Positions 13,913 to 41,097 of a DNA stretch of 64,000 nucleotides are shown in pieces (position 1 is the first letter of the stretch; every line of letters starts with the position of its first letter). The notes under the pieces were generated by a model. That model was not told the origin of the DNA. It was given only the letters and a program-made list of their open reading frames with translations, and searched no databases. This DNA comes from Octopus sinensis (lineage: Eukaryota): positions 20,274,001-20,338,000 of the forward strand of contig NC_043005.1 of assembly GCF_006345805.1 (NCBI RefSeq), read 5' to 3'. The position numbers were made by a program, and so were the translations under genes.

Positions 13913-13918
13913 AAACAA

Positions 13919-14060
13919 ATGCTGCGTGTTCGATCGAAAATGTCTCGGAGAGCGAAATGGCTGTGGGGACTATTTAAAAATTCTTTGTATTCTGTCAGAC
14001 AACAGAAAAGAATCATTGGAAATGATTATTTTGGGAATGTATATTACGAAAAGGAAGCAA
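13919..14060 (+). CDS. NDUFAF2: NDUFAF2 coding exon 1
   Basis: MLRVRSKMSRRAKWLWGLFKNSLYSVRQQKRIIGNDYFGNVYYEKEA; basic N-terminus resembling a mitochondrial presequence; donor A|GTAACT, phase 1. Confidence 0.92.
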
Positions 14061-17000
14061 GTAACTGTTTCTTTTTGTTTAAAAAACAAACAAACAATTT
14101 TTTTTCTCTTGTATCAATTATGTATATTAAACATAACTTAGTGGAATGAAATTATGTAACATTGAATGTCTCTATCAAGGGTGTTTCAAAGTATCAAAAA
14201 TGTTTTATTTGTTCCTCGTCGTGTCTTTGTCTTTATAGCTACGAAACTGCATGTTGAATTGCTGTTGTTTAGGTCCAAATCAATTTTAATTAAGTAGACC
14301 TTTGATCAAAAGCATTCCAGGCATGACCATTCCATATATTCAAGGACATCGAGTAATACCTTATCTACCGTGTCATTCTCTTTTTTTAACGTTGATAGAG
14401 TGCGATCTGAAGGTTATTTGACTGTTATTTCTAAGAGGTCGAGCTATAATGGAGATTCCTACGATATCTCATGTAGATAGTACCAAGTTCAGTTTCTACC
14501 GAAGTTGGCTTTGCCCTTCTTCCTTTCGATAGGCGGAGGTAAAGATCATGGACCGCACCCCCTTTGCGATATTTTTGGTTTCTTTATTACAGGAACACAC
14601 TATATCGAGGGCAAAGATTCCGAATCTGCAAAAAAATCTGCATTTCAAAATTTAAATCCTCCCCCCCCCCGCTAAATTTCTTAAATTTTCACTTTTTATT
14701 AAAATTTTTTTGGGCAAAATGCATAGAAAATACAGAGATTATGATGCTGAAAATAAAATTCTGTAAAACTAGGGATAGATGAATGGTTAGTGAGAGCTGT
14801 GCAAGCCATGTACAGGGACGCTGTCAGTAAGGTGAGGGTTGGCAACGAGTACAGTGAAGAATTCCAGGTAGAGGTCGGGGTCCACCAAGGTTCAGTTCTC
14901 AGCCCTCTCCTATTTATCATAGTCCTCCTGGCAATAACAGAGGAATTCAAGACAGGATGCCCCTGGGAGCTCTGCTATGCTGACGACCTTGCTCTAATTG
15001 CTGAGTCACTATCAGAACTAGAGGAGAAGTTTCAAGTGTGGAAGCAAGGATTAGAATCGAAGGGCCTTAGAGTCAACCTAGCTAAAACCAAAGTCCTAAT
15101 AAGTAGGAAGGTAGACAAACCACAAATCCCTTCAGGTAGATGCCCCTGCTCAATCTGTGTGGAAAAGGTGTAGGTAGAAACTCTATAAGATGTACCCAGT
15201 GTAAGCTATGGACACATAGGAGGTGCAGCAATATCAAAGGAAGGCTAACTGGGAAGATAGTTTTTGTATGTGACAGATGCTCAGGAGCAATAAACAATGA
15301 AAATGTGCAGAGAACAACTTCCGCCACATTCCAGGGAGAAAAACTAGAAGTAGTTGATAGCTTCTGTTACCTAGGTGACCAAGTCTGTAGCGGGGGGGGG
15401 GGGGGCGCTGAAAGTATAGCTGCTAGAATTAGAATAGCCTGGGCAGAGTTCAGAGAGCTCTTACCTCTGCTGGTGACTGGCTTCCATGCTGGTGGCACAT
15501 AAAAATGATGCCAGTGGCATGTGAAAAAACATTCGAATGAGGTTGTTGCCAGTGCCACTGGACTGGCTCCTGTGCAGGTGACACGTAAAAAACACCATTT
15601 AAGAGTAGCTGTTGCCTGACTGGCCCTCATGCAGTGGCATGTAAAAGCACCCACTGCACTCTCGGAGTGGTTGGCATTGGGAAGGGCATCTAGCTGTAGA
15701 AACTCTGCCAGGTCAGATTGGAGCCAGTCCTGAGTCAAATCGTCCAACTCATGCTAGCATGGAAAGCGGAAGTTAAACGATGATGATGATATATATACAG
15801 ACACACCTCGACTTAAGTCATTTCCATTTTAGTTGTTCTTAATTATACGTCAGTTTTCAAAAGTAATATATGGAAAAATAAAAATCAAGTTAAGTCATTT
15901 CACTGGACTTTACCTCTGTCCGCTGCAGATATTGGAATATTAAAATCAATAGAAAACCATTAAAAGTACATAAAATCATGTTACTGTACAATAAATAAGA
16001 ATAAAAGCATATAAAATCATATGAAAATACATACAGTAAATGTTAAGATACACACCATAAAGTAGTGTAGCTTAGTGAACGAAATCATGAAATCAGCTGT
16101 GTTATCTAATTTACTGATCTTTTGGAGCTTATATTGCACTGTAGTTCGAGTATCTGCCATTAGATGTCATTGTCACTCATGATTCCCGCGATTGTTTTGA
16201 ATTCAGATTTGTTTATGTCTGTTTATCGGCTACTTTCTCATTCTTGTTTGTTTGTGACTTTATTTTTTGCCCCCGTGGCTCCTAAGAAAATTAAATGTGA
16301 AAGTTCTAAGTGTCATACTATAATGCTGGAAATACAGAACTGGCAATGGTTATTATCTAGCCCAGGGACAAATAAATTCAGCCTAGCCGAGCTTAGAGAC
16401 AAGTTTCTGTGATAGTGATAGACTGATATCCTCTCTATGGAGAGATTTATCACTCACCTTCTTACTATTGCACAAAAGCTGAACACTGCTCGCCAGAAGG
16501 CTCTCAGAACTTAGGAGACATCTTTTCATATATCTTAATACAGCTATCACAGCTGGCTGGAACTCTGTTAGATCATCTAGATGGAGGTCCTTAGCCATCT
16601 AGTGCCATGTCACTACTAACAAAAGTAGGTTTAAATGTCCTGGCATTTGAGAGTTAAATAACTTGGTGATAGATGGTGCACCATGTTGGTTACAGAAAAC
16701 AAACCCTGTTGACCTCTTGGATTGGACTAACTGAACATGGGGCAAGGGTTCAAATCTGCTACTATCCAGAGAGAAAGATTTCTTTCTCATCTGTTGAGCA
16801 CCAAAGTGGAGCTAAGCCTTTAAAAGTTTGCCAAAGTTCTGGAGACATATAATTGACTGTTAATTAGCTGATTAACTTTTTTATGTGAATTTATGAAAGA
16901 TTACAGAAAATTCAAACGATCAATCTATTTCTCTGAAATTTCAGATCCTTCTCGAAACTTGAAAGGGGCTCGATGGGTTGAACGTGCAGATGGAGATCAG

Positions 17001-20000
17001 ATGACACCCCCAGATATGCCTGTAGAATGGGAAGGTAATCCAGTATTTCTTCTTCTTTCATTTGTTTAGCCCTTTATGTAACTTTTGTGTGTGTGTGTGA
17101 GAGAGAGAGCTAGAGAGAGAGTGTGTGTGTATGTGTGTGCATGTTTACTGGTATTGATAGCCAAGTTGGGCCTCATATATTATTGATGCTACTGTAAATG
17201 CAAGAGATGTGCTCAAGAACTGAAAGTTACTCATCTTCTTCTAGTCAAATGTATTTCAGTTTTCAGGGTGGCATTATCAGAAGTAAGTTGGGTTATACCC
17301 TTTGTCCAAGCTAAGTGATGTGTATAAAGAGTTAAAATTATTGTAATAATGTTACATTTTGCTATACTTACTTTGGTGTACATATGATGTCATTTACTCA
17401 GGGTGGGTTGAGCTAGCTCTAACCAATCAGTTCATCATGTCCCCCACGTATGCTGACCACATCCAATGGTTGACTGCTGTTAAGGCTGTAATAGATATCC
17501 ACCCTCAGTTCCACTGCTGAAACCCATAAATGTAGGGGCCAGATTGTGCTTCCATATCTGCCTTTACTGTCACCAGCCACATCTACAACTCAACAGTGAA
17601 TGACAATTATGGCTACAGTGTCTGCACTATCTGATGTTCTTGATTTCCCAGGAGGGTATTTCTGTGATAAATTACTGAACATTTGGCATAACTGGCAGAC
17701 TTGTTTCTTTGGAATTACTGCCAAAACATTCAGTATGGAAGAGTAGAATGTTTATTGAAAGAATATTTATTGAAAAGACTATTTTATTTGAATTAAAGAA
17801 TAAAGAATAAAAATAATAGATGAATACTATCAAAGAAATGCAAATGCATAAATATCAACTGAAACAAATAATTATTTTTGTTTTAGAAATACTGTAATTG
17901 TTGTAATGAGCCATCACTGGATATTTTTCTGTTGAAAGTATTTGATAATGGAAATATTTGAATAGAAATATAATGAAGCGTTTACATTCTGCATTATGTC
18001 TTTAATATCCTTCCATATTTTAAACCAATTCACCTGAGGCTACTTCTGGCTTATTGGCAACCCCCCCCCCCCCCCAACAAAGTCCACCTATTTTAGTGTG
18101 CAGGTGTTTAATTTAAAACTTAATGTAGTAATTTTATGCAAGAAGCTTTTTATAGGTTATGCTATAAATACCAGATCAATACAGAAATAAATACAGTAAT
18201 GCCTCAATATATGAGTTAATTCATTTCCAGAGAATGCTCATAAAGCAAACATTTGTCAACAGAAAATAAAACTTGTAAAACCAAGGTCTCGTAAAGCAGG
18301 TCTTTGTAAAATGAGGTATTACTGTATGATACTAATTATTTAAATTCAACAAAATTCTTGATTAGTTTCAAATTAGAACATATAGGTATGTGTATTTGAG
18401 AAGAAATATAACTCTGAAATAGTAATACTATGTTATGTTTTATTTTATGTGTTTGTGTCTAATGTAAATTACTTAATGGGAATTTTTCCAGCTTGGATCC
18501 GTGGCAAGCGACAAAATCCACCAACAGAAGAGGTAAGAAAACTTCTTTGAAGTGGTTTTGTGTAACTTAAGCTAAGGTAAGATATTTTCTGATAACTGCA
18601 AATTGTTGAAGTAGTAAGGATCTGGATATTAATGGTTCGAATTCTGTCAAATAAAGCTTTCAAGTTTATTGAATGTAAGAGTCCCAGATGATCTGGTATG
18701 TATTTCTAACGTTTAGCTGAAGTGAGGAGATGCAAAATAGTGTCCTCTCTAGAAACTTGAAAAAATGCCTGCAGTCATTTCATTTCATTTCATTTCATTT
18801 GGGTTTGAGTCCATGCTCAGGCCAAGTCGAAGACTCCACCCTCAGAGTCTGGTGTGGTTGCCAGGTTGTATTCTCTGCTTAAATTTGACATGTGTAGGAG
18901 CGAGTTTGAGTCAGTTTGTGCTCGTTGTGTATATCCTGGGAGATGGGGTTCATCTCTAATGGTGCTTAAGTATCTATCCAGTTGCAATTTGAATGATTCC
19001 ACACTGCATCCTGATAGATTTCTGACATGTACCGGAATGGAGTTGAACAGTTGTGCTCCTCGAACCAACAGACTTGATTCTCGCAGGGTTTTGCTGCCTG
19101 GCCAGCTTTTTGTTGATTGGTGGCAGCTGGCAGCGTCTTCCGTGGCGCAGTGAGTGGTAGGTTTTGATACCAAAGTTTGGCACCTTCTGCTCTATCATTT
19201 TCCAAATGTATATAATTCGGTATCGCTCAAATCTTCTTTCTATTGAGTACCTCCTCAAGGTTTTGAGTCTTGCCAATAGTCCAGGTCCCTCGTTTCTGAG
19301 AAGTATGAGGTAAAATTTCTTTGGAGCGATTCTATCTTAGATAGTTGGCCCTTTGTTGTTGGTGACCACAACTGAGAACAGTAGTCAATCCTCGGAAGTA
19401 TACTGTTCCAGAGGGTTTTCATTGTTGAGGTATCTCTTGATTTGAAGGTGCGCAAGATCCACCCGCTGTACTTTCTTGCAGTAAGACAGACTGAGTCAAG
19501 GTGTTCTCTGAATTTTAGGTTGGTTCCCATGTGGATGCCTAAATCTTTCACATACTGTTTTTCCATTATTTGTTGTCCTGATGGTTTCTGTAGTTTGTTG
19601 TATTTTTCAGATCTTGATCTGTTCCGTAGCGAATTAGTTCAAACTTCTTATCATTGAACAACATGTTGTTTGTTTCCTGCCATTTATATATGGTGGTCAG
19701 GTCCTTTTGTAAGGCCTCTGTATCCACCTCGTCTTTGATTGTCTCATGACCCTGGTGTCATCAGCAAAGATGAGACGTTGCTGGTTGTATCTTCATCTAT
19801 GTCAGAGATGAGGATGAGAAACAGGATTGGGCCGAGTACTGTACCTGAGGAACACTGCTGGTCACAGGTGATGGTGTTGAATGGGTTCCATTCACAGTGA
19901 CTGTTTGAGTTCTATTTGTAAGGAACTCGTGTATCCATGTAACAACTTTTCTCTCCTAGGGCCGAGTACTGTACCCTGAGGAACACTGCTGGTCACAGGT

Positions 20001-23000
20001 GATGGTGTTGAATGGGTTCCATTCACAGGAAGGCAGGAGTTTGATTTCCTTCTAGGCAGTGCTCATTATTTTGAGAATTATATCAGGTAACTAGGAAAGA
20101 GAAGCTAGGTGTCAAGGTTATGTAGCAAAGGGAGATGTTGAAAGTCAGGTGTTTGATAATGTTCTGCAATATGAGGATCAAAGGTACGAGGTGTTCTGAA
20201 TTGCAAGACAATGTATCAGAGAGAACTGGGATCTTGTTGGTGAGAAATGTGTGCTGATGGCTAATGATATGCTCACAATTAGTGATTCTGAAAAGAAGTG
20301 CCACTATAAAAGGCTGCTAAATGTGGAGAGTGCATGAGAGAATAAGGGTTTTCCCAACTTAAACTGAATAGAGAGACCAGCTACCCTAGTTGATAATAGG
20401 ATGATAAATAATGCAATTGAGATTGTAAAAGCAAGGAAAACCTCTGGTCAATCAAGAATTAAATTTGACTAAGCAAAAATCGAACTTCTAGTAAGCAAGA
20501 AAAGAGATTGAACTCCCTTCAGGAAAACAACTTTGCTTGATATGCTGGAAAGGTGAAGGTAGAAATTCCATATGGTGTACCAAGTGCAAGCTATAGATTC
20601 TAGGGTTGCAGTGGAATCACAGGAAGGTTAATGTAGAAAGATTTTGTATGTGAAAGATATAGTAGAGCAATAAATACTATGTCCAGATGGGAAATAGATT
20701 CTCTCAAATTATCTCAGGAGGCTCCCTACAAATAGTAGATAGTTTTGGTTATCTTGGTGATCTAATTAGCAACAAGCTAATTAGATCACCAAGTTCTGAA
20801 AGTATACTTGCTGAAATAAAAATATGATGGAGAAAGTTCCAGTGAGTTATTATCTTTGTTGATGACAAAAGATCCCTCAATGAAAGTGAAAAGCAGAATG
20901 CATGATGCTTGTGTATGAAAAGCAATGCTACATGGTATGAATGGTATGAGAAGTGACTGGTATTGGTTTCATTAAAAAAAAGTATTCAGTACACTTTGCA
21001 TTGGGAAAGACATCTGGTTGTAAAAACCATGTTAAAGCAGACATAGGAACTTGGTACAGTCCTCTTTTGTTGGAATATGTCAAGCCATCCAACCCATTCC
21101 AGCATGGAAGATGGACTTTAAACGATGATGATGACCTTTGAGTAGTAAGTAACCCAATGTCTTACACATTCAGTAATCCCAATTCAACTATCATTTAGTG
21201 GGTAAATTTAGCCGCAAACTTGTAGGTCAAAGGTAATTTAAAAAGAAACTTTGAAAGTCACAGTAGTTTGCAAGTATTATCATGTTTTGTTCTTATCAAC
21301 ATTTCAACACCTGCCTACTCACTACCTCTGATCTTGTTTCTTTCCCACCCCCATCATCATCATTATCATCACCACCACCCCACCATCCTTTCCTCCTTTA
21401 ATGTTTTTCTGTTTGTGACAACATATTCAAATGTTACAATTTCAAGGGAAATAACCTCATCTGTATTCAGTGTGGTTCACAATAAAATACAGTGACATCC
21501 TGATCTAAGCATTGGAATTTTCTGATCTGTTTGTCTGCTACCTGCTATGTATTATTAGGATAAATTTGTTCGTATTAACCTTGCTACCTTCTCATAATAA
21601 AAAAAATAAAAAATAAAAAATTAATTAAAATGCTACAACTATATGATGAAATTGAAGCTGTAATCTATTATAAATAGACCTCAAGTGGCCTGAACTCTTT
21701 ACATGAACACCACCCTGTACTTAACTCCATGTCCCCCTACATGGCCTTGCTATTTGCTTTTGAGCCAAATTAACTAACTAACTAACATAAATGCAATATA
21801 TTATTTATATATTTGTAATACATTTGCCTGTAAAATTAGTATTAATTATGTTTCTGATATATTGTTTCTTTTAGAATGTGCAGCTCAGTGGGGCAGGTAA
21901 TGTCCTTAATTCACTGGGGCTGTAGGTTCAAATCAGACCATGAATGCAGAGAGCTATGTGTGATGTGTAAGACGTGTGATGATGCTGTATGGCAGTGAAA
22001 TATAGACAATGAATGTTAAGGACTATAAAAGTTTGTGTAATATATATGAGGTATGAGAGTGAGGCAGGAACAGTGAATGTAGAAGGCTTTATGTGCGATA
22101 TTTATAAATTGTGTGATGATGTATGGTGGTGGTGATGGATATATATGAGACTACATGTGGTGTGTATAAGATGTATGATGTTGTATGGCAGTGAAACACT
22201 GACTATATCAGATGTGTATATGAATCTGTGTGGCAATTAATATTGTGTGCATGAGATGTGTGATGGTGTATAGCTATAAAGCATTAACAGTGAACTTAGA
22301 GGACTATATGTGGTGTTTGTGAGATGCATATTGAGGTATTCTAGTGAAACAGTGAATGTAGAAGTCTATATGAAGTGCATGAAATTTGTGTAATGGTGTA
22401 TAATTGTTAAATATGGACAGTGACATGTGTAAGAGAATTGTATGTATTGTGCATAAGATGTATGCTAGTGAAACACTGATAGTTAATATTAAAGACTCTG
22501 GCATAAGGAAAATGTGTCATGGAATTAAGGACAATATGAGATATGTGTAGCGAGTTGTATGCCAGGTGAATGTATAGGATTATATGTGGTGCATGTTGTA
22601 TGGCCATGAAACATGGATAATTTGACTATATGAAATCTGTGCAAAATTTGCAATGCTTTATAGTGGATAGTAAATATTAAGACTCTCCAATTAGTGAACT
22701 GGAGGGAATCATGAATAGTCTGCTTGATGTGCATTGTAAATTTAAAAGAAAGTTTGAGTATAAATGGATTGAGAAGATTCCAAATGTAACAGTTCTTTGA
22801 TTTCTTTAAATTTGAATGTGATTATTTGTTTGTTCTAGGAAATCCAAAGAAACTATGCAAAAATGATGAAAACTATTCACCGAGCTAAGGAATTAGAACA
22901 AAAATATGCAGTTAGTATGATTTCTCCTTTCATATTGATGTTTTTTCTGTTGAAAGTAATTTTGTCATGAAATGTTCCTTCCAATAAAACTTTATGTAAT

Positions 23001-26000
23001 ATATACATAATTTAGGACAATGGTTTAAAAGCACAATAAATCTGTAGAATTTGGAGTTTAAAGGGAATAGGAAACAAAAAATTTTCCAAATACCTTCTTT
23101 GTTTCTTTATGAATTTTCCAGTACAATTACAAACTTCCTAGTGTACCTATGTTACTGTTGTTCAGACATAGTTACTAGTACACCTGCCTAGTTATTAGTG
23201 ACTAGATATGTTGACACTAGTGATCAGGTAGGTGCACTAGTACAGTAATACTCAGGTGCAGCAGTACCTGAGCACTGCTATAGTTACCTAGCCACTAGTG
23301 TACTTATCTGGTATGTACTGTTCCTATCTACCTATTGTATCAGTTCATTAAGAATGAAATGTTCGATTTTCTTATGCACCAACTTTGACAGTCATTAACT
23401 CTAATGTTTTATCCTGACAATTCTTTATTTTTTCAACTTTGAAGAGTTACATCATCACTTTTTGAAATGCAATTCATGGTGTCTGATTATATTGTGAATA
23501 TTCTCTTGCAAATCAATCTTTATGAACCAATAGATAGATAAAAAATTTGAGTTGTTTATGAATATGAGTTCTGTCATGGAACCAATGCATTCCAGACAGC
23601 TCAAAACATCAATGAGCTGTTTGGTGAAGATGTGGTCAATGAGAACACTGTACATCAATGGTTTGAGAAGTTCTGGTCTGGTGACTTTACTCTTGAAAAT
23701 TGGCTCCTTAGTAGACTTGAGACCAAGGTGGATAATGATGAGCTAGAAATTGTAGTGGAAACAGATACATTTCAAACTATGCGTGAGTTAGCAGCAATGT
23801 TTGATGTTTAAATTCCAACTGTATTGGACCATATGAAACAAATTGGCAAGGTAAAGAAGCTGCACAAGTGGATACCACATGAACGGAATGTGTCTCAAAT
23901 GATATGTTGTCTTGAAATTTGCTGTTCTTTGCTGTCACAGCATAAAAGCGAACCATTTTTGCATCGTATTGTTACGTGTGATGAAAAATGGATTCTTTTC
24001 AACAATTGCAAGTGTTCTGCATGGTGGTTGAATAGAGACAAAGTGCCAAAACACAATCCAAAAAAGAATATTCACCAAAAAAAGCTAATGGTGTCTGTTT
24101 GGTGGTCAAGTGCTGGTGTCATCCACTACAGCTTCATGAGACCTGATGAGTCAATTGCAGCAGATGTATACATCAACCAATTGGATGAATTGATGAGTGA
24201 ACTTGCAATTAAACAGCCGAAATTGGTCAACAGAGACAGTCCAATTCTCTTGTAAGACAATGCTCAACCACATGTTGCACAAAGAATGCTACTCAAGTTG
24301 CTGGAACTCAACTTGGAAGCATTCTGTCATCCACCATATTCACCAGACCTTGCACCAACTGACTATCATGTTTTCCAGGCATTAGACAACTTATGGCAAG
24401 GAAAAAAAAAACATCAGATCTGAAGAAGATGCAAAAGCAGCCGTTTGTGATTTCATCACCTCTTGCTCTCCAGAATTCTTCACTGCCAGTATAAGTTACC
24501 AATAAAATGGCAAAATTGTGTTGATAATTTAGGTGCATACTTTGGTTAACTCCATTGCCTTTTGTTGAGATAAAGTATAATAAACTTTCAGTTCAAACTC
24601 GGACATTTCATTCTTAATCACCTGATATGTACCAGTTTGCTGTTGCTCCAACCTGGTCACTGTTGTGCCTCCATAGTTACTAGTATAATTACCAAGTTGC
24701 TTCTCTGTCTATCTACTTGGCCACTGTTGTTTCTCCCTGTTTACCTGTTTACTGTGTTATCAACCTAGTAGTTGGCTTATCTACCTTGTCACTAGTTTAC
24801 CTACGTGATTACAAACACAGCTTTAAATTAGACTGACATCTTGACAACATCTTAACATTGTATAAAGCTGTACATTTACCAAAGTCTTACTTAAGTACCA
24901 TTGCAGTGCCACATATTATCTGTAGCATTAATTTTAGTGATACTGGGTTCTGCTGGGAGCAATACAGAAAAACAACTGCTGTGCAAGATAAGAAAACAGG
25001 TGATTGTGATGATCACAAAATGTGTAATCACTTACGTACTATACCTGCAAAGCCACACATAGGTATGAAATAAGAATACTTCATTATAAGTCTTAATAAG
25101 TACCATTGCAGTGCCACATAATCTGTAGCATTAATTTTAGTTGGATACTGGGTTCTGCTGGGAGCAATACAGAAAAACAACTGCTGTGCAAGATAAGAAA
25201 ACAGGTGATTGTGATGATCACAAAATGTGTAATCACTTACGTACTATACCTGCAAAGCCACACATAGGTATGAAATAAGAATACTTCATTACTCTTAAGC
25301 AGTCACTTTATCTCCACTGCAGACCTCCTTATCAGGTACTGTGTTTTGGGCAATGTAGTGTGGGGAACTCATTCCTTTCCAAGCTATTATTCTACAACCA
25401 GAAATTACAGGATCACAAGTGAGTGAAATAGCTATACTGAAAATTGGAATTTTAAAAACAAATCTAGTTTACCAGGTGCTTGCACTATAATGCTATAATA
25501 CACACATATGCATGTGTGTTTGTTTGTATGAGTATGTGCACATGTGCATGCACACACTCACACACAGAGTTAACCATCTGCCACATCAATTGAAGTATAA
25601 GATCACTGACAGCCATTTAGAAACTAATTTTTTAATAGATTTATTGATACAGATGCCTGAACGCACATACTGATATACATACATATTTTCTGATTGTAAA
25701 TTCATGTTCTTTATATATACATATGCATACACATTTATACGTATATACATGTAAGGATTGCCCCAAAAGTAAAGCAAAAGTGGGCATAACTTTTTCATTA
25801 ACTAACATAGATAATTTAAATTGCATATGTTTGTTGGGAAATAGTAATTCTTCCTTTATACAAAGGTACTACTAACATAGACTCCAACATGCAATGTATT
25901 TGCATCATCATTAAACCTATCCGTTGAATCTTGTTTCAAAAAGTTCAAGTTTTTAAAAAAAATAAATGCTTTGATCAAGGCTTTCTTTACCTTTCTCCCA

Positions 26001-32000: not shown

Positions 32001-33550
32001 ATACCTGAAAACCTGATATTTCCCTCTGACAAAACTTAATAAGTACACAACACATTCCTTGGATAATGGAACAGTACCTTTAATGATTCTACAAAAAGAA
32101 AATAACTGTGTCTCCTTGGCGTAAATCTCTGTGTTACCACATGTAGCAACCACGATTGAGAACACGCCATTCTTCTTCGTAAAGATAATTGTAAGTACAT
32201 CCCGAATTCTAGAAAAACCATACACACAGTTTTATATATCAGCACGCACCACACATGACTATATACACAAACCAAATTTAAATCATACTTTCTTCTTCTT
32301 TGCTGAGGCATTACAGTGAGTATCATGTGCACATTATAAACACACCAACCATTGAATCCTTACATCTCTTGATTGTACATATAATTGTATCTTTTTTCAG
32401 TCACACATACAATGAGGAAAGCGGGAACAGTTAACAACAAAAAATAAGATCTTATTTATATATCCCCCTAACAAGTGCGCACATTATAAACACACCAACC
32501 ATTGACTCCTTACATCTCTTGATTGCACATATAATTGTATCTTGTATACACACATATAATGAGGAAAGCGGAAACAGTTAACAACAATAACAACAAAAAA
32601 TAAAACATCTTAATCTCCCTAACAAGTGTGCTATATCTTCACTTCTTTTTTTTTTCTTCTTTTTCTTTGTTTTTTGAGATTTGCCAACACTACACCTGAT
32701 TTTCTCCCCTCCATACACACACAATTATGTATCTGACTGATACACTGTTCGCTTTCCAGACATTTGTACATTACTGCATATACTTTATATGCGCTTTTGA
32801 CAAGTTGTGGTGCACCTGAGCACTGTATACAATAATTTCATTATTATTATTATTATTATATTATTTGAGATATACAGATTTTTAAAATCATTTATGTGAC
32901 ATGTATTTAAATACCAAAGCAATTGCAGGTATATTAACCCTTTAGTATTTAAACCAGCCATATCCGGCTAAAATATTCAGCCTTGTTTTATCTTCAAACT
33001 GGCTAGATCTGGTCTCTCACACTTCCCCTACAATGTTATTCTAAAAATAAACAATCATTGAAATATCAAAGCTACACGGTAATGCATGACCAAAGCAAAT
33101 GAATGTGAATAAATAAGCTTTACATCTGATAGAGAAATCTGAATGCTAAAAGGTTAAATAAGATACAAGATAAATTTTAGATTTTATTGAAATTATTTTC
33201 TCACACACACACCATATACGCATGCATGTATGCATGCATGCATACACACACACACAAGTAGAAAGAGAGAAGGTATGGATGAATGTTATATAATTATGAT
33301 ATATAAATATGGATTTGGGTGATAATAAATATTATGGTATGTTTATATAGAAGTATTTGGACAAATGGATAGATGGTGTTAGAATATGGACAAATGTATG
33401 AAATGGTGTATAATGTATTGGTATGTGAATATTTTCACTCTTTTTGTTGCTCTTTCTCTTTTGTCTTTATTATTAGGAGAATTCCCAGAATATCCTGAAT
33501 ATGAAATAATACCTGGCGAGAAGACAGAAACTGATGATAAAAAGAAGTGA
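13919..33550 (+). CDS. NDUFAF2: NADH dehydrogenase (ubiquinone) complex I assembly factor 2 (mimitin), 154 aa; join(13919..14060,16945..17034,18492..18532,22839..22910,31415..31460,33477..33550)
   Basis: NDUFA12/NDUFAF2 family motifs IGNDYFGNVYYE and PVEWEAWIRGKRQNPPT, plus C-terminal FPEYPEYEIIPG. All six exons are GT-AG and phase-consistent (465 nt). A second in-frame ATG at 13940 is an alternative start. Confidence 0.93.
14765..15478 (+). mobile_element. RTE-clade LINE fragment (RT motifs plus PHD-like finger), frameshifted
   Basis: GVHQGSVLSPLLF, LCYADDL, GLRVNLAKTK, then CxxC...CxxC...HxxC...CxxC and LEVVDSFCYLGD. Confidence 0.92.
15480..15790 (+). mobile_element. SINE/RTE-tail element abutting the RTE fragment
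   Basis: ggagtggttggcattgggaagggcatc...catgctagcatggaaagcggaagttaaacgatgatgatg. Confidence 0.8.
16945..17034 (+). CDS. NDUFAF2: NDUFAF2 coding exon 2 (90 bp)
   Basis: tttcAG acceptor, AAG|GTAATC donor; PSRNLKGARWVERADGDQMTPPDMPVEWE. Confidence 0.93.
18194..18324. mobile_element. Tc1/pogo-type MITE (131 bp)
   Basis: TIRs CAGTAATGCCTCA / TGAGGTATTACTG flanked by TA on both sides. Confidence 0.7.
18492..18532 (+). CDS. NDUFAF2: NDUFAF2 coding exon 3 (41 bp)
   Basis: tttttccAG acceptor, GAG|GTAAGA donor; (A)WIRGKRQNPPTEE. Confidence 0.93.
18776..20028 (-). mobile_element. 5'-truncated CR1-group LINE (RT C-terminus and 3' end), frameshifted
   Basis: Minus strand gives VPQGTVLGPILFLILISDI, FADDTR, ILPRIDYCSQLWSP, YSIERRFERY, LFNSIP..VRN and FKLQLDRYL; (TGAAA)n 3' tail at 18776-18800; ~69-bp duplication at the 5' junction. 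Confidence 0.9.
20080..20960 (+). mobile_element. Highly degenerate RTE LINE fragment
   Basis: Broken frames read ARQCIREN.DLVGEKCV, HYKRLLNVE, SIWCTKCKL and VDSFGYLGDLIS, paralleling the younger copy at 14765. Confidence 0.65.
21930..22740. repeat. Degenerate minisatellite (tgtgatg.tgtatggcagtgaaac.. units)
   Basis: Recurrent gtgtgatg / gtatggcagtgaaa / cagtgaatgtagaag motifs at roughly 110-125-bp spacing. Confidence 0.65.
22839..22910 (+). CDS. NDUFAF2: NDUFAF2 coding exon 4
   Basis: ttctAG acceptor, GCA|GTTAGT donor; EIQRNYAKMMKTIHRAKELEQKYA. Confidence 0.88.
23340..24625 (+). mobile_element. Full-length mariner (DD34D) transposon, inactivated
   Basis: TIRs (TCAGTTCATTAAGAATGAAATGT / ACATTTCATTCTTAATCACCTGA) with TA TSDs; 1286 bp; transposase motifs WIPHE, IVTCDEKW, DNAQPH and HPPYSPDLAPTD with 34-residue spacing; in-frame stops present. 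Confidence 0.95.
24881..25290. repeat. Near-identical ~205-bp tandem duplication
   Basis: The unit aagtctta...aagaatacttcatta occurs twice; differences are confined to the first ~60 bp. Confidence 0.92.
26325..26552 (-). mobile_element. SINE/RTE-tail element
   Basis: Near-identical to 2985-3200. Confidence 0.8.
27078..27990. mobile_element. Probable Penelope-like remnant with inverted terminal copies and a degenerate minimal hammerhead
   Basis: About 27078-27235 is a diverged reverse complement of about 27835-27990. The right copy contains TTCTT-CTGATGA-AGG..TCT-GAAA-TGTT-AAGAA (27865-27902). Confidence 0.55.
28575..28870 (+). mobile_element. Helentron/DINE-like non-autonomous element
   Basis: gcaaaggcggatgtattgttttcagtcgtgtttgtttgtttgtctgt followed by ggatggattcagatgaaactttca; (GTTT)n/ctgt microsatellite architecture resembling DINE/HINE elements. 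Confidence 0.45.
29361..30259 (-). mobile_element. LINE ORF1/gag-like zinc-knuckle protein (289-codon open frame; ATG at 30259 one base out of frame), no ORF2
   Basis: CHLCLEPGYIKKNC (CX2CX4[H>Y]X4C) followed by a basic, low-complexity linker (SSKKGRKRKK, GKKKQKK); no endonuclease or RT downstream; AATAAA on the minus strand at 29084-29089. Confidence 0.6.
30942..31060 (+). mobile_element. Possible Gypsy integrase C-terminal remnant
   Basis: KTISVDRLKKAF resembles the (T)VSIDRLKPA motif after Gypsy integrase cores; short match only. Confidence 0.35.
31415..31460 (+). CDS. NDUFAF2: NDUFAF2 coding exon 5
   Basis: ttttcAG acceptor, GAA|GTAAGT donor; SASPKFEENVLPRTR; supplies the phase 0 to 1 change needed to join exons 4 and 6. 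Confidence 0.8.
31530..31920. repeat. Degenerate ~60-bp tandem repeat
   Basis: Recurrent ctgagacaat.tctac / cagggatcct.tag motifs just downstream of NDUFAF2 exon 5. Confidence 0.65.
32328..32630. repeat. ~150-bp tandem duplication
   Basis: gcacattataaacacaccaaccattga.tccttacatctctttgatt...ccctaacaagtg occurs twice. Confidence 0.88.
33477..33550 (+). CDS. NDUFAF2: NDUFAF2 terminal coding exon 6
   Basis: Long pyrimidine tract plus ttAG; (R)EFPEYPEYEIIPGEKTETDDKKK*; AATAAA near 33554 and 33624. Confidence 0.88.
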
Positions 33551-34361: not shown

Positions 34362-34755
34362 CTCTTTTACTCTTTTACTTGTTTCAGTCATTTGACTGCG
34401 GCCATGCTGGAGCACCGCCTTTAATCGAGCAACTCGACCCCGGGACTTATTGTTTTGTAAGCCCAGTACTTATTCTATCGGTCTCTTTTGCCGAACTGCT
34501 AAGTTACGGGGGATGTAAACACACCAGCATCGGTTGTCAAGCAATGCTAGGGGGACAAACACAGACACACAAACGCATATATATATATATACGACGGGCT
34601 TCTCTCAGTTTCCGTCTACCAAATCCACTCACAAGGCTTTGGTCGGCCCGAGGCTATAGTAGAAGACACTTGTCCAAGGTGCCACGCAGTGGGACTGAAC
34701 CTGGAACCATGTGGTTGGTAAACAAGCTACTTACCACACAGCCACTCCTGTGCCT
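34362..34755 (-). mobile_element. tRNA-derived SINE, full length
   Basis: Reverse complement of the 50140-50540 copy; tRNA-like head and (TTTACTC)n tail. Confidence 0.85.
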
Positions 34756-35381
34756 AAATTAGAAATTAATTTAGACTCATGTTAAATATGTTAGCTCCAA
34801 TGTAACTACATATCTTTCAAGCTGCATACTTTCCTGGATAATTTTACTCCATCATTCATTTATCTGCTTACAGACTATGAGTTTAATTCCAATGTCAGTG
34901 TTTGTAGTTTCTGAGTAAAGCACTATATTCTACATTGTCTCATTTCACTTTGTGTCAGTATTAAGTACTGCTGATGATTTAGGAATTTTACCTGTGATTA
35001 ACTGACATCCTATCCATGGGAAATATATCTCTCAACTCCTAACAAATTGGGGAGAAATATCTGCCATTAAAACCCTCTTTTGATTTTAATATTGAGCTGT
35101 AGACTAACAAAAAAATGATAAGCTATAGATATGCTGTGATGTAAAAGCACCAGTGGAGCTTTTATTTTCATACAGTGTAGCTTGAGCAAGACAGCTTTAT
35201 GGAAACTATCCTTCTCTGACCAACACTCATATAAAAATTTGCAAAACCCTTATCAAGGGTTCTTTTACTTTCTGAGTTCAAATTCTGCTAGGCTCAATAA
35301 AACACTAGCTGAATACTGAAGTTAGTTTCATTGACTGTACTCTCGTTACCAAATTTTGTCACCATGTCCCAATTCTTGAAA

Positions 35382-35778
35382 TCTTTATATATAAAAGTAA
35401 GGTCGCGTGTCTGTCTCCTACGATTTAGATTCCTAACTACTCCCACATTTTGCGGTGCAGTTTAACCAAAACCGGGTATCTTATAGTCGTGATTCATATC
35501 AAGCCCTTCTGGGTATTAGCGCACGTCTACGATGAGTCTACGATTTAAAAACAAATTTACCATCATTCTTTTCCATTTTAATGCATTTTTTCGCTATTAT
35601 ATAAGGGAAGTAACTCTCTAAAAATGTCTACGATGAGTCAACGATTTAAAAAAAATTTACCATAATTTTTTTTCCATTTTTAATGCATTTTTTTGCTATT
35701 TTTTGGCTATAACTCTCTAAAAATGCTTATATAGTTATTTCCCTTACAAACCCGAGCAACGCCGGGCGATACTGCTAG
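35382..35778 (+). mobile_element. Non-autonomous Helitron (397 bp)
   Basis: 5' TC start after A, 3' CTAG followed by T, subterminal hairpin CCCG-agcaacgc-CGGG (35751-35766), internal ~98-bp tandem duplication. Confidence 0.88.
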
Positions 35779-36383
35779 TCAATTATATAATTGGAAACCA
35801 ATAATAGAATGTATGAGTGAGATGACACTCCAGAAGGAGCAATCCAGGAGTTACAAATTGGGAGGTCACATGATGTTGTGGACTATATGGTTCTTTTGTG
35901 TTTTGCTAGCCATGGTTGCTCTCTCTTCATCACTTAGGATTTGTAGCTCTGTCATCCTGAGTTGCTCAGAGATGAGGTTGATGTTGATGATGTTTTGAAT
36001 TTGTTATATGAACTTAGCCATCCTTACAAAGTCTGATTGCTGAGGATGTTTCTTTCTCTTGACCACAAACAATACATCCCTATAATACTATGATCAAAGG
36101 CATTCTAACACACATACTACTTTTTTATTTTTCAGATCTTATTTAATTTAAAATGTTTGTTTGCAATATTTCTGTGGATTTCAATCACAAAATATATAGA
36201 CAAGGAATTTAGCTGCTGTTTCTAGCATATTGGCAACAGCTGTGCATATACATACACAAATCTATTGATAATTCTTGTTGTTTAGTTCCTAAATCAGCTC
36301 TTATCCAGCAGACTTATAACCAAATGCATTCTATCCATGACCTTCCAATTTTTTTACTTTATATTTTTCAGGTACTACATTAG

Positions 36384-36422
36384 CAGTGTTTCCCAATCTG
36401 TGGTCCACAAACTAAATTCAAA

Positions 36423-36501
<79 letters not shown>

Positions 36502-36704
36502 TATAGCCAGCTGGAGGAGATATCTTCCTGGGGCTACAAACTACAGTAGCATCCACCCTTAGGGGTTAGCCATATTCAAATGGCAAATATGCATCACAAT
36601 ATATATATATATATATATAAAGGATAATCATATTAAAAGGGGTCCGTGGGAAAACTCACTTAAATAAAAGGGGTCCTTGGTAGTGAAAAGGTTGGAAACC
36701 ACTG
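36384..36704. mobile_element. hAT/Charlie-like MITE containing an expanded (TA)n
   Basis: Ends CAGTGTTTCCCAATCT / AGGTTGGAAACCACTG; TSD not clear. Confidence 0.6.
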
Positions 36705-39699
36705 ATCTAATGTGTCTTAAAAAAAAAAATGGTTGAGTGTAACAAAAAGGAGATTTAGTCTGAAAACAGACAAAATGAAATGTTCACGTTTGGATCTCTC
36801 AACAGAGGCTTGATCAGTTCGGTTGGAACATCTTTCGAAAGACGTATTCGCGTGCTCATATTCCTGTGTGTAAGCGCAAACAAAAACCCATGCAGGCAAA
36901 AAAAAATACGACCAATTCTTTTACCAAATTTGAACATTTTCTGTTTTGGAGCACAAAATCTATGGGAAACTTCAATATTGATAGCTGTTCACGTGTAATA
37001 CATATCACACACACACACACATATATATATTGATCGGCTTAATCGGGATTAACAAGATGGGTTTTAACTAGATTTCAAATAATTTTTTTCCATAAAATAG
37101 ACACGAAAATTAGGGTCGTAATCTCTGCCTTATCCCCCTTTACAGCTGCACTCTCTAGCAAATGGTGAGCACATGCTCTGGCGTAAGGATTTTACTGAAA
37201 CCACTTACACTTATATTACAAAGTTAACTTTGAGCTGCTATAGAAAGTTCACTCTGAGGTGAGGCTTGTAATTACATTAAATTAACGACTGATTACTTTC
37301 TATTTTCAAACTGTTTCAATCTTCATTTATACCTGCTCTATTGTTACGTTTCATTTTCTTTCTTACACGCACACACATCGTTCCGACTGGTTCCCCTCCC
37401 ACTCCTGTCAGTTGTCAGTTTCGAAGCAAAATTAACACGGTTTTGAGAAGACTCTAACCGCAATTAGCAACCGATTCATTTCGGTTGTTATGTTTAAACT
37501 TTGCAGCAAATAAAATGTTATTATTAGTCGTCGTTGTAGAAATAGTAAATCGTTTGACTGAATGTTTTAAGCAACGGTCCTCTGAATTCGAAGTCTTCCT
37601 TTCGCCCGTTTGACGTGGATGAAATTAACCACCAACATACCTGAAGTCCATTCAGTCGTTTAGGACCCTGAACTACATCAGTTGACTTAATGCTTAACTA
37701 TAAAACCATTCACACATATATATATATATATACATACATACATACAATCACACACACATACACACACACACATATATATTTATATATATATAAAATTCGG
37801 TATATAAAATCTGTACACTACTTCAAACAATCTATACATTTGTATATATACAATTTCCTTTTAGAACTATTCCACTTTATAAACACTGTCAAAGTGTTTA
37901 TGAAACTCTGAGATATCACGTTTTCCCGTTTAATGCTTAAATTATCACTTCTTGAGAAGACACTGATATAGCAGAAATTGTAGTTGTCTGACAGAATGCC
38001 TTGCGGTATTTAGTTGCAACTCTCTATGTGATAAGTTCCAATCCCATTGAAATTGACTTTGTCTTTCATCTTCCGGTATCGATAAAATTAAGTATTAGTT
38101 ATTGTTCTTTAGCCTTAGTCCACTCCAGTCGAGCAGATCTATAGTGAAAAGTGGTCTAGCCATGACAGTCCGCTGTCTTACTTATTTAGGACTACCTTGT
38201 CATATGTGTTCTTCAATTTTCAGGACGGTAGGATGTAATTTGACTGCTATTTCTAACACCTCGAGTGACCATTTGAGGCTTTTTTCGTAAACATGAAGTC
38301 AATCTAATAAACTATATCCACCCATCAAACGCACTGCGCTCATACTAAAAAGCAATTTTATGTTGTCGTAGAAATGGCAGTGCATTAGCAGAATGGTAAG
38401 AGCTTTCGGACAAAATTCCTTTCTAATCTGAGGTCAATTCATCATTTATCCTCTGAGGTCGATAAAATAAGGTACTGGGGTTGATTTAATCGACTACGTA
38501 CACCTCAATTAATTTCAGGACTTGTGCCTATATTAGTCTCTATTCGTAAAAACATTGTTGGCTTTTTGCCTAAATTAAAACGTCTATTATTTTTAATAGT
38601 AGTTTTGATAAATTATCCACTTCTTTATTTTAATACATGTTATATCAATCACATGCTCTGTTACACGACAGAGACGGCATGTTGGTTTCAGTTCCTACCC
38701 TAAATTTGGTAGTTCTCCCAATTTTCGGTTAATCGCCTATTTTTATCTCTCTGCCACTGCTCCCCCCCTCTCTCTCTCTATATATATATATTTATATATA
38801 TATATATGTATGTACACACACACAATACGTGTGTACGCTCAAATATATATTATTTTTTTTTGTTTCGCTTTGGTCAATTATATTTGGCCCTAGTACTTAT
38901 TTCAGATTGGCATTTATTCTATGTATTTCTATTTTATGAACAAATAAATTGTTGTAAAAAGACATGACATACATTCACCACACATATACCAATACGATGA
39001 GTTTCTGCCTAGTTTCTGTATACCAAATTTTCCTCAACACTATCTTGATTAACCCAAAGCTAAAGTTATGTCTCAATGAAATCGAACCCAGAACCACATG
39101 GGTGTGAAGTAAGCTTGTTAACCACTCAACCATGGTCTATGAAAATATATGAATGTAATATTGTCCAGACTAAATGCTTGGCAGCTTTAATTCTTTTGGG
39201 GTTGATGAAATAAGTTGTACCAGTTGTGCACTGAGGTTGATGTGATTGACTATCCCACCTTCCCAAAATTTCAGGCCTTGTGCCTATTGCAGAAAGGATT
39301 ATATTTGGTTGTTGGTATGGCCAAGTGGTTAAGAAGTTCACGTTGCAGTTGTGAGAAAGGTATAACATTGTCATAAACTGTGCTACCCTGGTTCTGTAGT
39401 AAGAGCACATTTGTCTAGAATGCTTAGCCACTTGTTAAATCAGGAGCTGGTTATTCTGTTGGTTAAGTGACTGAATTCTCTTTGTTAAAGTATGGAAGTC
39501 CATCCCAGGAAGCTGTTGGACGAAGTGGTGAGAAAAGATCTTACAGAGGTTGAGACTCACAGAGGGGATGACAGGGGACCAAGACTCCTGGCAGTTTCCT
39601 TTGCTTGAAAATACACATCAAGTTAAGTAAAGGTGTGATTAGGTTCATCCCTTACAACCCTCTCTAGCTGAGCATCCTTAATCTTGCAGGCTTGTAGGT

Positions 39700-40085
39700 G
39701 CTGGTGCAACATAAAAAAGTACCCATGCCGGTGATATGTAAAAACACTCAGTACACTCTCTAAAGTGGTTGGCATTAGGAAAGGTATCCAGCCAGAGAAA
39801 CCTTGTCAAAACAGACGGGCACTGAACAGCTCTTCAGCTGGTCAGCTCCTGTGAAACCGTCCAACTCATACCAGCATGGAAAATGGACGTCAAATGATGA
39901 TGACGATGATATGTATATTGATATATATATACGGAGTGGTTGGCGTTAGGAAGGGCATCCAGCTGTAGAAACACTGCCAGATCTGACTGGAGCCTGGTGC
40001 AGCCTCGTGGCTTCCCAGACTCCGGTCGAACAGTCCAACCCATGCTAGCATGGAAAGTGGACGTTAAACAATGATGATGATGATA
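39700..40085 (+). mobile_element. Two tandem SINE/RTE-tail elements
   Basis: Two successive gtggttggc.ttagga.agg..tccag...ccaac.cat.c.agcatggaaa.tggacgt.aaa.atgatga units. Confidence 0.75.
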
Positions 40086-40863
40086 TATATATATTATGGA
40101 GATGTACTTGCATAGCAAGTGACCTAATCTGAGATCGTGTGCTGAAACAAAAGCAATTGCAGCATGGAAGGTGTTTATAAGCCATTTAAAAACACACAAA
40201 AATCGTTAGATTCACTTCAAGCATGGAATTTTGTCAGTGAACAGGTCATGGTCTCAAAGTGACAAAAATATTTTGGCAAATTAAATTTAAATGTTGAAGT
40301 AAATCTAACAGTTTTTGTTTTTTTTAATGGCTTATAAACACCTTCCACACTGCGACATACATACATACATATATATGTGTGTGTTTTTATATATATTGTA
40401 TGTATGTACACACACACATCTAATTATATATTATTGGATGGATAACATTTGTAATATAAATTATATAAGACATATATTTACTGTCATCATTATCATCATA
40501 CTTGTGCCTTTCTGTGGTGGCATGTGTTGGACAGATCTTCTCTAACTGGGCATCTTGTCACATGTTGCAGTCACTTATCATCCCCCTGGTCAGTTTTAGC
40601 ATTCTAAGATCATCTTTCATTACCCTTTCCCATGTCATCCTCAATCTTTGTCTTCTATGGACACCTACTTGAATTATTTTGGCCCCTTTTCACCCAACTG
40701 TCATGTTTCACATGTATATACCTGTGCAGCCTTCTCTCTTGCACAACACAACTGATTCCTCTAAATATAGAAATATATTTGTCTCTTTCAGGTGTCTTAG
40801 AGTTTGTTGAACTTTTGTCTGAAGAATAACTGCAAGGAAACAGAAAGAAAGAAATTAACCAAA

Positions 40864-41097
40864 ATGTTTGAAGACTGGGACTGGAATGAGATGGTAGGGA
40901 GATTGATCAGGTGGGCTGCAACAAGCCCCTGGGAATTCATCTACTACGTGCTCTTGTGTTTGTCTCCGTTTTTCTTTGTCAGTGCCATCTTGGCATGGCA
41001 GCTTGCCAAACAAATAGAACACAAGGAAAAGAGAAAGAAGAAGACAAATAAAAAAGAGTCTAATGTTGCAAAGACTCGACGACAAAAAGCTGACTGA
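40864..41097 (+). CDS. SMIM15: Small integral membrane protein 15 (77 aa), single coding exon; exon starts at 40792
   Basis: MFEDWDWNEMVGRLIRWAATSPWEFIYYVLLCLSPFFFVSAILAWQLAKQIEHKEKRKKKTNKKESNVAKTRRQKAD matches the SMIM15 pattern (WAAxDPxxF...LTPLF..SA.L.W.LAK.IE..EK..KKK...N.AK..R.K.D). Acceptor tttcAG at 40790-40791; AATAAA at 41320. Confidence 0.93.
   Translation: MFEDWDWNEMVGRLIRWAATSPWEFIYYVLLCLSPFFFVSAILAWQLAKQIEHKEKRKKKTNKKESNVAKTRRQKAD

What the first reader, a model, noticed from the sequence alone, without database searches (positions are those of the whole stretch)
13919..41097. NDUFAF2-SMIM15 adjacency shared with human: candidate deep bilaterian microsynteny
Seen: SMIM15 is the next gene after NDUFAF2 (7.3 kb stop to start, same strand). 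Established: in human 5q12.1 SMIM15 lies directly downstream of NDUFAF2, on the opposite strand, with ERCC8 head-to-head upstream. Coleoid genomes are extensively rearranged, so retention of the pair is notable. Here the orientation differs, and no ERCC8 was found upstream within the window; the novel secreted gene occupies that side. Inference: the linkage may be constrained, for example by shared regulation of two small membrane/mitochondrial proteins.
Basis: partly seen in the sequence, partly recalled or inferred. Interest (0 to 1): 0.7.

Follow-up and report, generated by a model that had tools for sequence, protein, structure and literature searches.

The report
Ancient NDUFAF2–SMIM15 gene neighbourhood, locally inverted
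Two small housekeeping-type genes, NDUFAF2 and SMIM15, sit next to each other here as they do in lizards, humans, amphioxus and an annelid, so this is a real but fairly ordinary relic of ancient gene order, with one gene flipped.

Summary
NDUFAF2 lies at 13919–33550 (+). It has at least five coding exons and transposon-filled introns. SMIM15 is a single coding exon at 40864–41097 (+). Stop to ATG is 7,313 bp, with no other recognisable gene between them. ERCC8 is absent from the window.

Both genes look orthologous. SMIM15 scores 97 bits against Pfam UPF0542. The best solved-structure match of the other gene is NDUFAF2 (E=3e-9), against E≥7e-3 for animal NDUFA12. Its intron positions and phases match the annelid gene.

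I anchored look-ups on SMIM15 with ±10 kb flanks. The pair is adjacent in amphioxus (with ERCC8 head-to-head, as in human), three lacertid lizards, the annelid Owenia and one unidentified invertebrate. In all of these the genes are convergent, 1.3–3.8 kb apart. The pair was not seen within 10 kb in a gastropod, two bivalves, a nemertean, a tick, a spider or a second cephalopod-like contig.

So the adjacency is inherited from the bilaterian ancestor, and the same-strand orientation here is derived. Shared regulation is not supported: each gene has its own CpG-retaining island. This is a new example of a known phenomenon and of modest interest.

The parts
13919..14060 (+). NDUFAF2 coding exon 1. 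The first in-frame ATG is at 13919. The second ATG at 13940 has A at -3 and aligns with the N-terminus MSTRA... of the L014 homologue. The donor GT is at 14061-62, phase 1.
   Evidence: motif G.D..GN.YY
16945..17034 (+). NDUFAF2 exon 2 (…RWVERADGDQMTPPDMPVEWE). Phase 1 at both ends. The intron falls after 'EWE/T', at the same place as in Owenia and amphioxus.
   Evidence: (E=4.5e-6 to Owenia)
18492..18532 (+). NDUFAF2 exon 3 (AWIRGKRQNPPTEE), which carries the NDUFAF2-type signature.
22839..22910 (+). NDUFAF2 exon 4 (EIQRNYAKMMKTIHRAKELEQKYA), 24 codons as in L014. The homologous phase-0 donor is at 22911. An alternative donor at 22915 would splice in frame directly to the last exon. A short exon 5, present in Owenia and L014, was not found.
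33477..33550 (+). NDUFAF2 last coding exon (EFPEYPEYEIIPGEKTETDDKKK*), entered in phase 1. It is homologous to the Owenia C-terminus KYPTYEEYEISPGE and to L014 FPKYDDFETYAGE. AATAAA signals follow within about 100 nt.
36600..39000 (.). CpG-retaining island with o/e 0.7-1.3 against a window median of 0.23. I infer it is SMIM15's own promoter and 5'-UTR exon region, 1.9-4.3 kb upstream of the ATG. A further spike lies at 35400-35700.
   Evidence: an equivalent island lies 2.5-5.5 kb upstream of SMIM15 in L001
40792..41345 (+). SMIM15 terminal exon. The acceptor AG is at 40790-91, and all three frames carry stops before the ATG. The CDS is 40864-41097 and AATAAA is at 41320-25.
13500..14700 (.). 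CpG-retaining island over the NDUFAF2 5' end (o/e about 0.6-1.35). I infer it is the NDUFAF2 promoter.
14061..33476 (.). NDUFAF2 introns, expanded by transposon relics: a reverse-transcriptase fragment at 14790-15173, a mariner transposase at 23824-24255, and a 289-aa ORF with a CCHC-like knuckle at 29361-30230 (-).

Best explanation
The NDUFAF2-SMIM15 adjacency is a relic of a compact gene cluster that already existed in the bilaterian ancestor. In that cluster the two genes were convergent, with stop codons 1-4 kb apart. In chordates ERCC8 lies head-to-head with NDUFAF2, and in amphioxus and one invertebrate NADAR lies head-to-head with SMIM15. In the lineage of this window a small local inversion turned one gene, so both now read on the same strand. 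Transposon insertions stretched NDUFAF2 to 19.6 kb and the spacer to 7.3 kb, and the outer partners ERCC8 and NADAR were lost from the neighbourhood. The two genes are transcribed independently, each from its own CpG-rich promoter. I infer that the adjacency persisted mainly because the ancestral spacer was tiny and filled with 3' ends, leaving little room for harmless breakpoints, rather than because the genes must be co-regulated. Shown: orthology, adjacency in five lineages, the derived orientation, and separate CpG islands. Inferred: the inversion event, the promoters, and the passive reason for retention.
For: Orthology. SMIM15 matches Pfam at 97 bits and is 57-81% identical to named SMIM15 proteins of molluscs, annelids and amphioxus. 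The best PDB match of the other gene is NDUFAF2 8ca5_t at E=2.9e-9, against E of 7e-3 to 0.7 for animal NDUFA12. The spliced product matches Pfam PF05071 at 48 bits. Intron positions and phases and the C-terminal motif are shared with Owenia and L014.

Adjacency, always convergent. Branchiostoma belcheri, two assemblies: NADAR(-), SMIM15(+), NDUFAF2(-) 1.4-1.5 kb away, then ERCC8(+) 268 bp from NDUFAF2. ERCC8 there is confirmed by E=1.4e-57 to human ERCC8. Three lacertid genomes: 2.2-3.8 kb apart, with NDUFAF2 identity confirmed at E=1e-26. Owenia fusiformis: 1.8 kb apart. ENA sample ERZ25072999: four 92-95% identical contigs carrying NADAR(-), SMIM15(+), NDUFAF2(-) 1.3 kb away. Human gene order is given in PMC12659240.

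Independent promoters. CpG o/e islands lie at 13.5-14.7 kb and 36.6-39.0 kb in a window whose median is 0.23, and L001 has the same upstream island. A splice acceptor and stops in all three frames precede the SMIM15 ATG.
Against: Within ±10 kb of SMIM15 no NDUFAF2 was found in the other three molluscs sampled (Gigantopelta, Pinctada, Dreissena). It was also missing in Tubulanus, Hyalomma, Nephila and the only other cephalopod-like contig, L001 (tblastn and motif scans). Retention within Mollusca therefore rests on this one window, and the 10 kb limit makes those negatives inconclusive. The orientation depends on one assembly. No transcript data were available, so the promoters, the SMIM15 5' exon and NDUFAF2 exon 5 are all inferred. 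Passive retention was not tested against selective retention.
Confidence: 0.8

Rival explanations
1. The linkage is held by selection. Either the two genes are co-regulated in one chromatin domain, or SMIM15 acts with NDUFAF2, for instance in mitochondrial complex I assembly, so that breaking the pair is deleterious.
For: The pair is retained in 5 of 12 sampled lineages over more than 500 My, and it stays adjacent even after an inversion in this window. Ancient microsyntenies retained in cephalopods are reported to be co-expressed more than random sets (PMC9023564). A human deletion of the ERCC8 and NDUFAF2 first exons lowered SMIM15 expression as well (PMC12659240), although the authors attribute this to a deletion spanning all three genes.
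Against: The ancestral orientation is convergent, so there is no shared promoter. The two genes have separate CpG islands here. The pair is absent within 10 kb in seven lineages. No function or mitochondrial localisation for SMIM15 turned up in the searchable literature. The tiny ancestral spacer gives a sufficient neutral explanation.
Confidence: 0.13
2. Chance re-association: the pair was separated in the molluscan ancestor and came together again in cephalopods through the extensive coleoid rearrangements.
For: All three other molluscs sampled lack NDUFAF2 within 10 kb of SMIM15 and have different downstream neighbours: an F-box/LRR gene in Pinctada and ECM29 in Dreissena. The orientation here is unlike every other positive lineage. 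L001 shows no NDUFAF2 within 10 kb.
Against: The prior for one specified gene landing directly next to another is about 1e-4. One loss in the gastropod-plus-bivalve stem explains the negatives. The negatives are limited to ±10 kb in large genomes, and the distance in this window is already 7.3 kb.
Confidence: 0.03
3. In this lineage the same-strand arrangement has produced a conjoined or read-through transcription unit, with SMIM15 expressed from the NDUFAF2 promoter as a downstream cistron or an alternative 3' exon.
For: The genes are on the same strand 7.3 kb apart, and a good splice acceptor (AG 40790-91) lies 72 nt before the SMIM15 ATG.
Against: A 2.4-kb CpG-retaining island sits 2-4 kb upstream of SMIM15, and L001 has the same feature without any NDUFAF2 nearby. 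AATAAA signals directly follow the NDUFAF2 stop. Stops in all three frames rule out a fusion protein.
Confidence: 0.04

Closest known systems
Human 5q12.1 cluster ERCC8-NDUFAF2-SMIM15(-ZSWIM6)
   Same: The same two orthologues are immediate neighbours, and NDUFAF2 is the upstream gene when read in its own direction.
   Different: In human, lizard and amphioxus SMIM15 is on the opposite strand (convergent), and ERCC8 shares a bidirectional promoter with NDUFAF2 (PMC11610623, PMC12659240). Here both genes are on one strand and ERCC8 is absent from the 13.9 kb upstream.
Conserved metazoan microsyntenies retained in coleoid cephalopods (Schmidbaur et al. 2022, PMC9023564; 275 blocks)
   Same: An ancient local gene order survives in a genome that is otherwise heavily reorganised. 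Collinearity and orientation are not preserved.
   Different: Those blocks are defined by three or more genes, so a two-gene pair is outside the definition. The pair is not in the held supplementary files of that paper or of PMC8851819.
Genomic regulatory blocks (bystander genes kept near a developmental target by interdigitated enhancers)
   Same: In human, NDUFAF2, SMIM15 and ZSWIM6 fall within one predicted regulatory block (PMC6906185).
   Different: In amphioxus, Owenia and ERZ25072999 NDUFAF2 spans only 1.3-3.5 kb, which leaves no room for enhancer arrays. No ZSWIM6-like or other developmental gene was recognised in this window. This mechanism therefore cannot explain the ancestral linkage.

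Membership tests
SMIM15 / UPF0542 (PF15086) | Match to the family profile above the curated cut-off; a protein of about 75 aa with one central transmembrane helix and a basic C-terminal tail | tested here: met
   97.4 bits against a cut-off of 27. The motif FIYYVLLCLSPFF...LAKQIE aligns with named SMIM15 proteins from 15 taxa.
NDUFAF2 (assembly-factor paralogue of NDUFA12, PF05071) | PF05071 domain above the cut-off | tested here: met
   The spliced product scores 48.4 bits against a cut-off of 23.
NDUFAF2 (assembly-factor paralogue of NDUFA12, PF05071) | Closer to NDUFAF2 than to the structural subunit NDUFA12 | tested here: met
   PDB search: NDUFAF2 8ca5_t at E=2.9e-9, animal NDUFA12 at 7e-3 to 0.7. 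The signature EWEAWIR..R..PPT.EEI is present. The C-terminal motif and intron phases are shared with Owenia NDUFAF2. No phylogenetic tree was built.
Ancient bilaterian microsynteny (gene-pair level) | Orthologues are immediate neighbours in both deuterostomes and protostomes | tested here: met
   Amphioxus and lizards; Owenia and ERZ25072999; this window.
Ancient bilaterian microsynteny (block level, as in PMC9023564) | Three or more co-occurring orthologues | tested here: not met
   ERCC8 and NADAR, the third and fourth members seen elsewhere, are absent from all 64 kb.
Ancient bilaterian microsynteny | Co-expression or shared regulation of the members | not testable with these tools
   No expression data were available. 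The separate CpG islands argue for separate promoters.
Bidirectional-promoter gene pair | Head-to-head orientation with less than about 1 kb between the starts | tested here: not met
   The genes are tandem here and convergent in every other lineage. Only ERCC8-NDUFAF2 in amphioxus is head-to-head, at 268 bp.
Genomic regulatory block | Arrays of conserved non-coding elements around a developmental target gene | tested here: inconclusive
   No alignable non-coding sequence exists between the window and L001 outside the SMIM15 CDS. No target gene was recognised in the window. Only one distant relative was available for comparison.

The most novel reading that the evidence does not exclude
SMIM15, a microprotein of unknown function conserved throughout animals, is functionally tied to NDUFAF2, for example in mitochondrial complex I biogenesis or a shared stress response with ERCC8. 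On this reading the adjacency, more than 500 My old and surviving even an inversion in a scrambled coleoid genome, reflects selection on a chromatin-level co-regulated unit NADAR-SMIM15-NDUFAF2-ERCC8.
Probability: 0.1. Interest if true: 0.6.

Novelty: new member of a known kind. Interest (0 to 1): 0.3.

Why it matters
Conserved microsynteny is a well-known phenomenon, and hundreds of ancient blocks survive even in coleoids, so one more pair does not change the picture. Three points have modest value. First, pair-level conservation like this is missed by the usual definitions that need three or more genes, and I found no paper or held supplement that lists it. Second, it gives a cleanly polarised local inversion, with the ancestral state convergent and the state here tandem; this could serve as a rare genomic character for dating rearrangements within cephalopods. 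Third, long-lived neighbourhood with a complex I assembly factor is one of the few leads to the function of the uncharacterised microprotein SMIM15.

Tried and rejected
- **Word-indexed homologue search with NDUFAF2 exons 1-2.** It found nothing.
- **Exhaustive representative search with the spliced protein.** NDUFAF2-anchored synteny look-ups were therefore impossible, and every look-up was anchored on SMIM15.
- **Look-up of the window's own SMIM15.** It returned no record, so the source species stayed unidentified. Cluster look-ups gave no names for P0001, P0002 or P0010.
- **Literature.** No paper pairs NDUFAF2 and SMIM15 (or C5orf43) with synteny, other than a human regulatory-block table. 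The supplements of two microsynteny papers contain none of the gene names.
- **Search for NDUFAF2 exon 5.** Splice-site and ORF scanning gave no convincing candidate.
- **Alignment of the window spacer with L001.** Only microsatellite-like hits came back.
- **Bacterial-type promoter and terminator scan.** It was uninformative and no better than shuffled sequence.
- **Rfam and tRNA scans.** Both were empty.
- **Retrocopy origin of SMIM15.** I considered and rejected it. The CDS is intronless in every taxon, so intron loss says nothing. The locus has an upstream acceptor and a CpG island shared with L001, and there is no poly(A) tract after the gene.
- **Inverted 400-bp repeats bracketing SMIM15 as the cause of the inversion.** I kept this only as an idea. 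The family has at least three copies in the window and 18% of the window is intra-window repeat, so a flanking inverted pair is expected by chance.
Full report
**1. What is in the window**

The window is AT-rich (about 35% GC), strongly CpG-depleted (median CpG o/e 0.23) and rich in repeats. That fits a large invertebrate genome such as a coleoid's. I could not establish the species. The window's own SMIM15 protein is in the database, but its source is masked.

SMIM15 is a single-exon CDS at 40864–41097 (+) coding for 77 aa.
- It matches Pfam UPF0542 at E=4e-28, 97 bits against a cut-off of 27.
- It is 57–81% identical to proteins named SMIM15 in molluscs, a nemertean, an annelid and amphioxus, and 43–47% identical to vertebrate SMIM15.
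- A polypyrimidine/AG acceptor at 40790–91 and stops in all three frames precede the ATG. The CDS exon is therefore preceded by a 5'-UTR intron and cannot be fused to an upstream ORF.

NDUFAF2 (+) was rebuilt exon by exon.
- Exon 1 is 13919 (or 13940) to 14060; exon 2 is 16945–17034; exon 3 is 18492–18532; exon 4 is 22839–22910; the last exon is 33477–33550.
- The spliced product passes Pfam PF05071 at 48 bits against a cut-off of 23.
- Its best solved-structure relative is NDUFAF2 itself (8ca5_t, E=2.9e-9). Animal NDUFA12 subunits score E=7e-3 to 0.7.
- It carries the NDUFAF2-type motif EWEAWIR..R..PPT.EEI.
- Two phase-1 introns lie at the same places as in the Owenia gene, one after 'EWE' and one before the last exon. 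The C-terminal motif FPEYPEYEIIPGE matches Owenia YPTYEEYEISPGE and L014 FPKYDDFETYAGE.

Two details of the gene model stay open.
- Owenia and L014 have a short exon 5 between exon 4 and the last exon. I could not find its counterpart here. An alternative donor at 22915 would give an intact five-exon ORF.

The introns hold a reverse-transcriptase fragment, a mariner transposase relic and a gag-like ORF.

**2. Is the adjacency ancient?**

The NDUFAF2 searches were blocked, so I anchored every look-up on SMIM15 with ±10 kb flanks. Besides the annotation, each locus was checked by tblastn and by four NDUFAF2 signature motifs. Those motifs gave no false hits in about 330 kb of sequence.

| Lineage | Locus | Arrangement around SMIM15 |
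|---|---|---|
| Branchiostoma belcheri (two assemblies) | L005, L006 | PTP(+), NADAR(−), SMIM15(+), NDUFAF2(−) 1.4–1.5 kb away, ERCC8(+) 268 bp from NDUFAF2 |
| Three lacertid lizards | L009–L011 | SMIM15(+), NDUFAF2(−) 2.2–3.8 kb away |
| Owenia fusiformis (annelid) | L004 | SMIM15(+), NDUFAF2(−) 1.8 kb away; no ERCC8 in the 4.6 kb beyond |
| Unidentified invertebrate, ENA ERZ25072999 (four contigs 92–95% identical) | L014–L017 | NADAR(−), SMIM15(+), NDUFAF2(−) 1.3 kb away, XK-related(+) |
| Human | literature | Order ERCC8–NDUFAF2–SMIM15–ZSWIM6 |
| Gigantopelta (gastropod) | L002 | No NDUFAF2 within ±10 kb |
| Pinctada (bivalve) | L003 | No NDUFAF2 within ±10 kb; F-box/LRR gene downstream |
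| Dreissena (bivalve) | L012 | No NDUFAF2 within ±10 kb; ECM29 downstream |
| Tubulanus (nemertean) | L007 | No NDUFAF2 within ±10 kb |
| Hyalomma (tick) | L008 | No NDUFAF2 within ±10 kb |
| Nephila (spider) | L013 | No NDUFAF2 within ±10 kb |
| Second cephalopod-like contig | L001 | No NDUFAF2 within ±10 kb; SMIM15 81% aa and 79.6% nt identical to the window; flanks cannot be aligned |

The amphioxus ERCC8 was confirmed by E=1.4e-57 to human ERCC8, so amphioxus has exactly the human arrangement. The lizard NDUFAF2 was confirmed at E=1e-26.

The pair therefore predates the protostome–deuterostome split, and the ancestral orientation was convergent with a very short spacer. This window is the only same-strand case. 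The negatives are limited to 10 kb in large genomes, and the distance in this window is already 7.3 kb, so they show loosening or loss but not proof of separation.

The alternative is re-association after a loss in molluscs. That needs an event with prior about 2/N, roughly 1e-4. One loss in the gastropod-plus-bivalve stem explains the same data. I give re-association about 3%.

**3. How it most likely works**

Two regions stand out against a window-wide CpG o/e of 0.23 (0.27 for everything outside the islands).
- One lies at 13.5–14.7 kb, over the NDUFAF2 5' end.
- The other lies at 36.6–39.0 kb, 1.9–4.3 kb upstream of the SMIM15 ATG, with a spike at 35.4–35.7 kb.

L001 has an equivalent island 2.5–5.5 kb upstream of its SMIM15, although no NDUFAF2 lies nearby. 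In a methylated, CpG-depleted genome such islands are the usual signature of unmethylated promoters. I infer that each gene has its own promoter and that SMIM15 has a 5'-UTR intron of 2–4 kb. AATAAA signals directly follow the NDUFAF2 stop.

The simplest reason for persistence is that an ancestral spacer of 1–2 kb, largely filled by two 3' UTRs, offers almost no neutral breakpoints. A small inversion then flipped one gene without separating the pair. A selective reason, either co-expression in one domain or a functional link, is not excluded, and I give it about 13%.

An inverted pair of a 400-bp repeat brackets SMIM15 (34360–34756 and 50140–50541, 91.8% identical). It could in principle have mediated the inversion. 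Such a pair is expected by chance in this repeat-rich sequence, so it is not evidence.

**4. Comparison with what is known**

Conserved metazoan microsynteny in cephalopods is established. Schmidbaur et al. report 275 ancient blocks retained in Euprymna scolopes. They define blocks as three or more genes, which excludes a two-gene pair (PMC9023564). None of the gene names occurs in the held supplements of that paper or of PMC8851819. No paper in the library links the pair to synteny, apart from a human regulatory-block table that lists SMIM15, NDUFAF2 and ZSWIM6 together (PMC6906185).

A regulatory-block mechanism cannot be ancestral, because NDUFAF2 spans only 1.3–3.5 kb in amphioxus, Owenia and ERZ25072999. 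The ERCC8–NDUFAF2 bidirectional pair known from human (PMC11610623, PMC12782172) is shared with amphioxus. It was not seen in Owenia or ERZ25072999 within the sequence available, and it is absent from this window.

**5. Verdict**

The 'constraint by shared regulation' inference is not supported. This is a new example of a known kind. It is useful as a polarised inversion character and as a weak functional lead for SMIM15, but it would not surprise a specialist. Interest 0.3.

Noticed in passing
window 12937-13722: A 786-bp near-perfect palindrome made of nested inverted arms 88-94% complementary, centred near 13325. It ends about 200 bp upstream of the NDUFAF2 ATG, in the place where ERCC8 sits head-to-head in chordates. 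It has no other copy in the window. It may be a foldback element or a rearrangement scar.
   Followed up: partly
window 36600-39000 (plus 35400-35700) and 13500-14700; L001 4500-7500: CpG-retaining islands (o/e 0.7-1.5) in a genome that is otherwise CpG-depleted (median 0.23). One lies upstream of each gene, and the SMIM15-side island is positionally conserved in L001.
   Followed up: partly
window 34360-34756 and 50140-50541; a third copy at 55991-56222: Copies of a repeat of about 400 bp. The first two are 91.8% identical, in inverted orientation, and bracket a 15.4-kb segment that contains SMIM15. This could be a substrate for the inversion but is equally expected by chance.
   Followed up: partly
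L005/L006 5262-8884 and L014-L017 1800-5930: A NADAR-domain gene lies head-to-head with SMIM15 in both amphioxus and the unidentified ENA invertebrate. This extends the inferred ancestral block to NADAR-SMIM15-NDUFAF2(-ERCC8). NADAR is absent from the window.
   Followed up: partly
window 15514-15806, 26331-26552, 39931-40091 (also 2654-3348 and 63451-63702): A short interspersed repeat family with 6-8 copies in the window. Its spurious ORFs read '...[13 protein letters not shown]...'. It inflates the mechanical ORF list.
   Followed up: no
window 29361-30230 (-): The longest ORF in the region (289 aa) lies inside NDUFAF2 intron 4 on the opposite strand. It is lysine- and glutamate-rich with a CCHC-like knuckle (CHLCLEPGYIKKNC) and has no Pfam match. 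It is probably a gag-like transposon relic.
   Followed up: partly
window 22911-33476: The short NDUFAF2 exon 5 expected from Owenia and L014 (phase 0 to phase 1) was not found. An alternative donor at 22915 would bypass it in frame.
   Followed up: yes
window 45495-47206 (-) and 60739-61384 (+): These are transposon relics downstream of SMIM15. One is a Tc1/mariner-type element (HTH_Tnp_Tc3_2 plus DDE_3). The other is a three-ORF element without a Pfam match. No recognisable host gene was found in 41-64 kb.
   Followed up: partly
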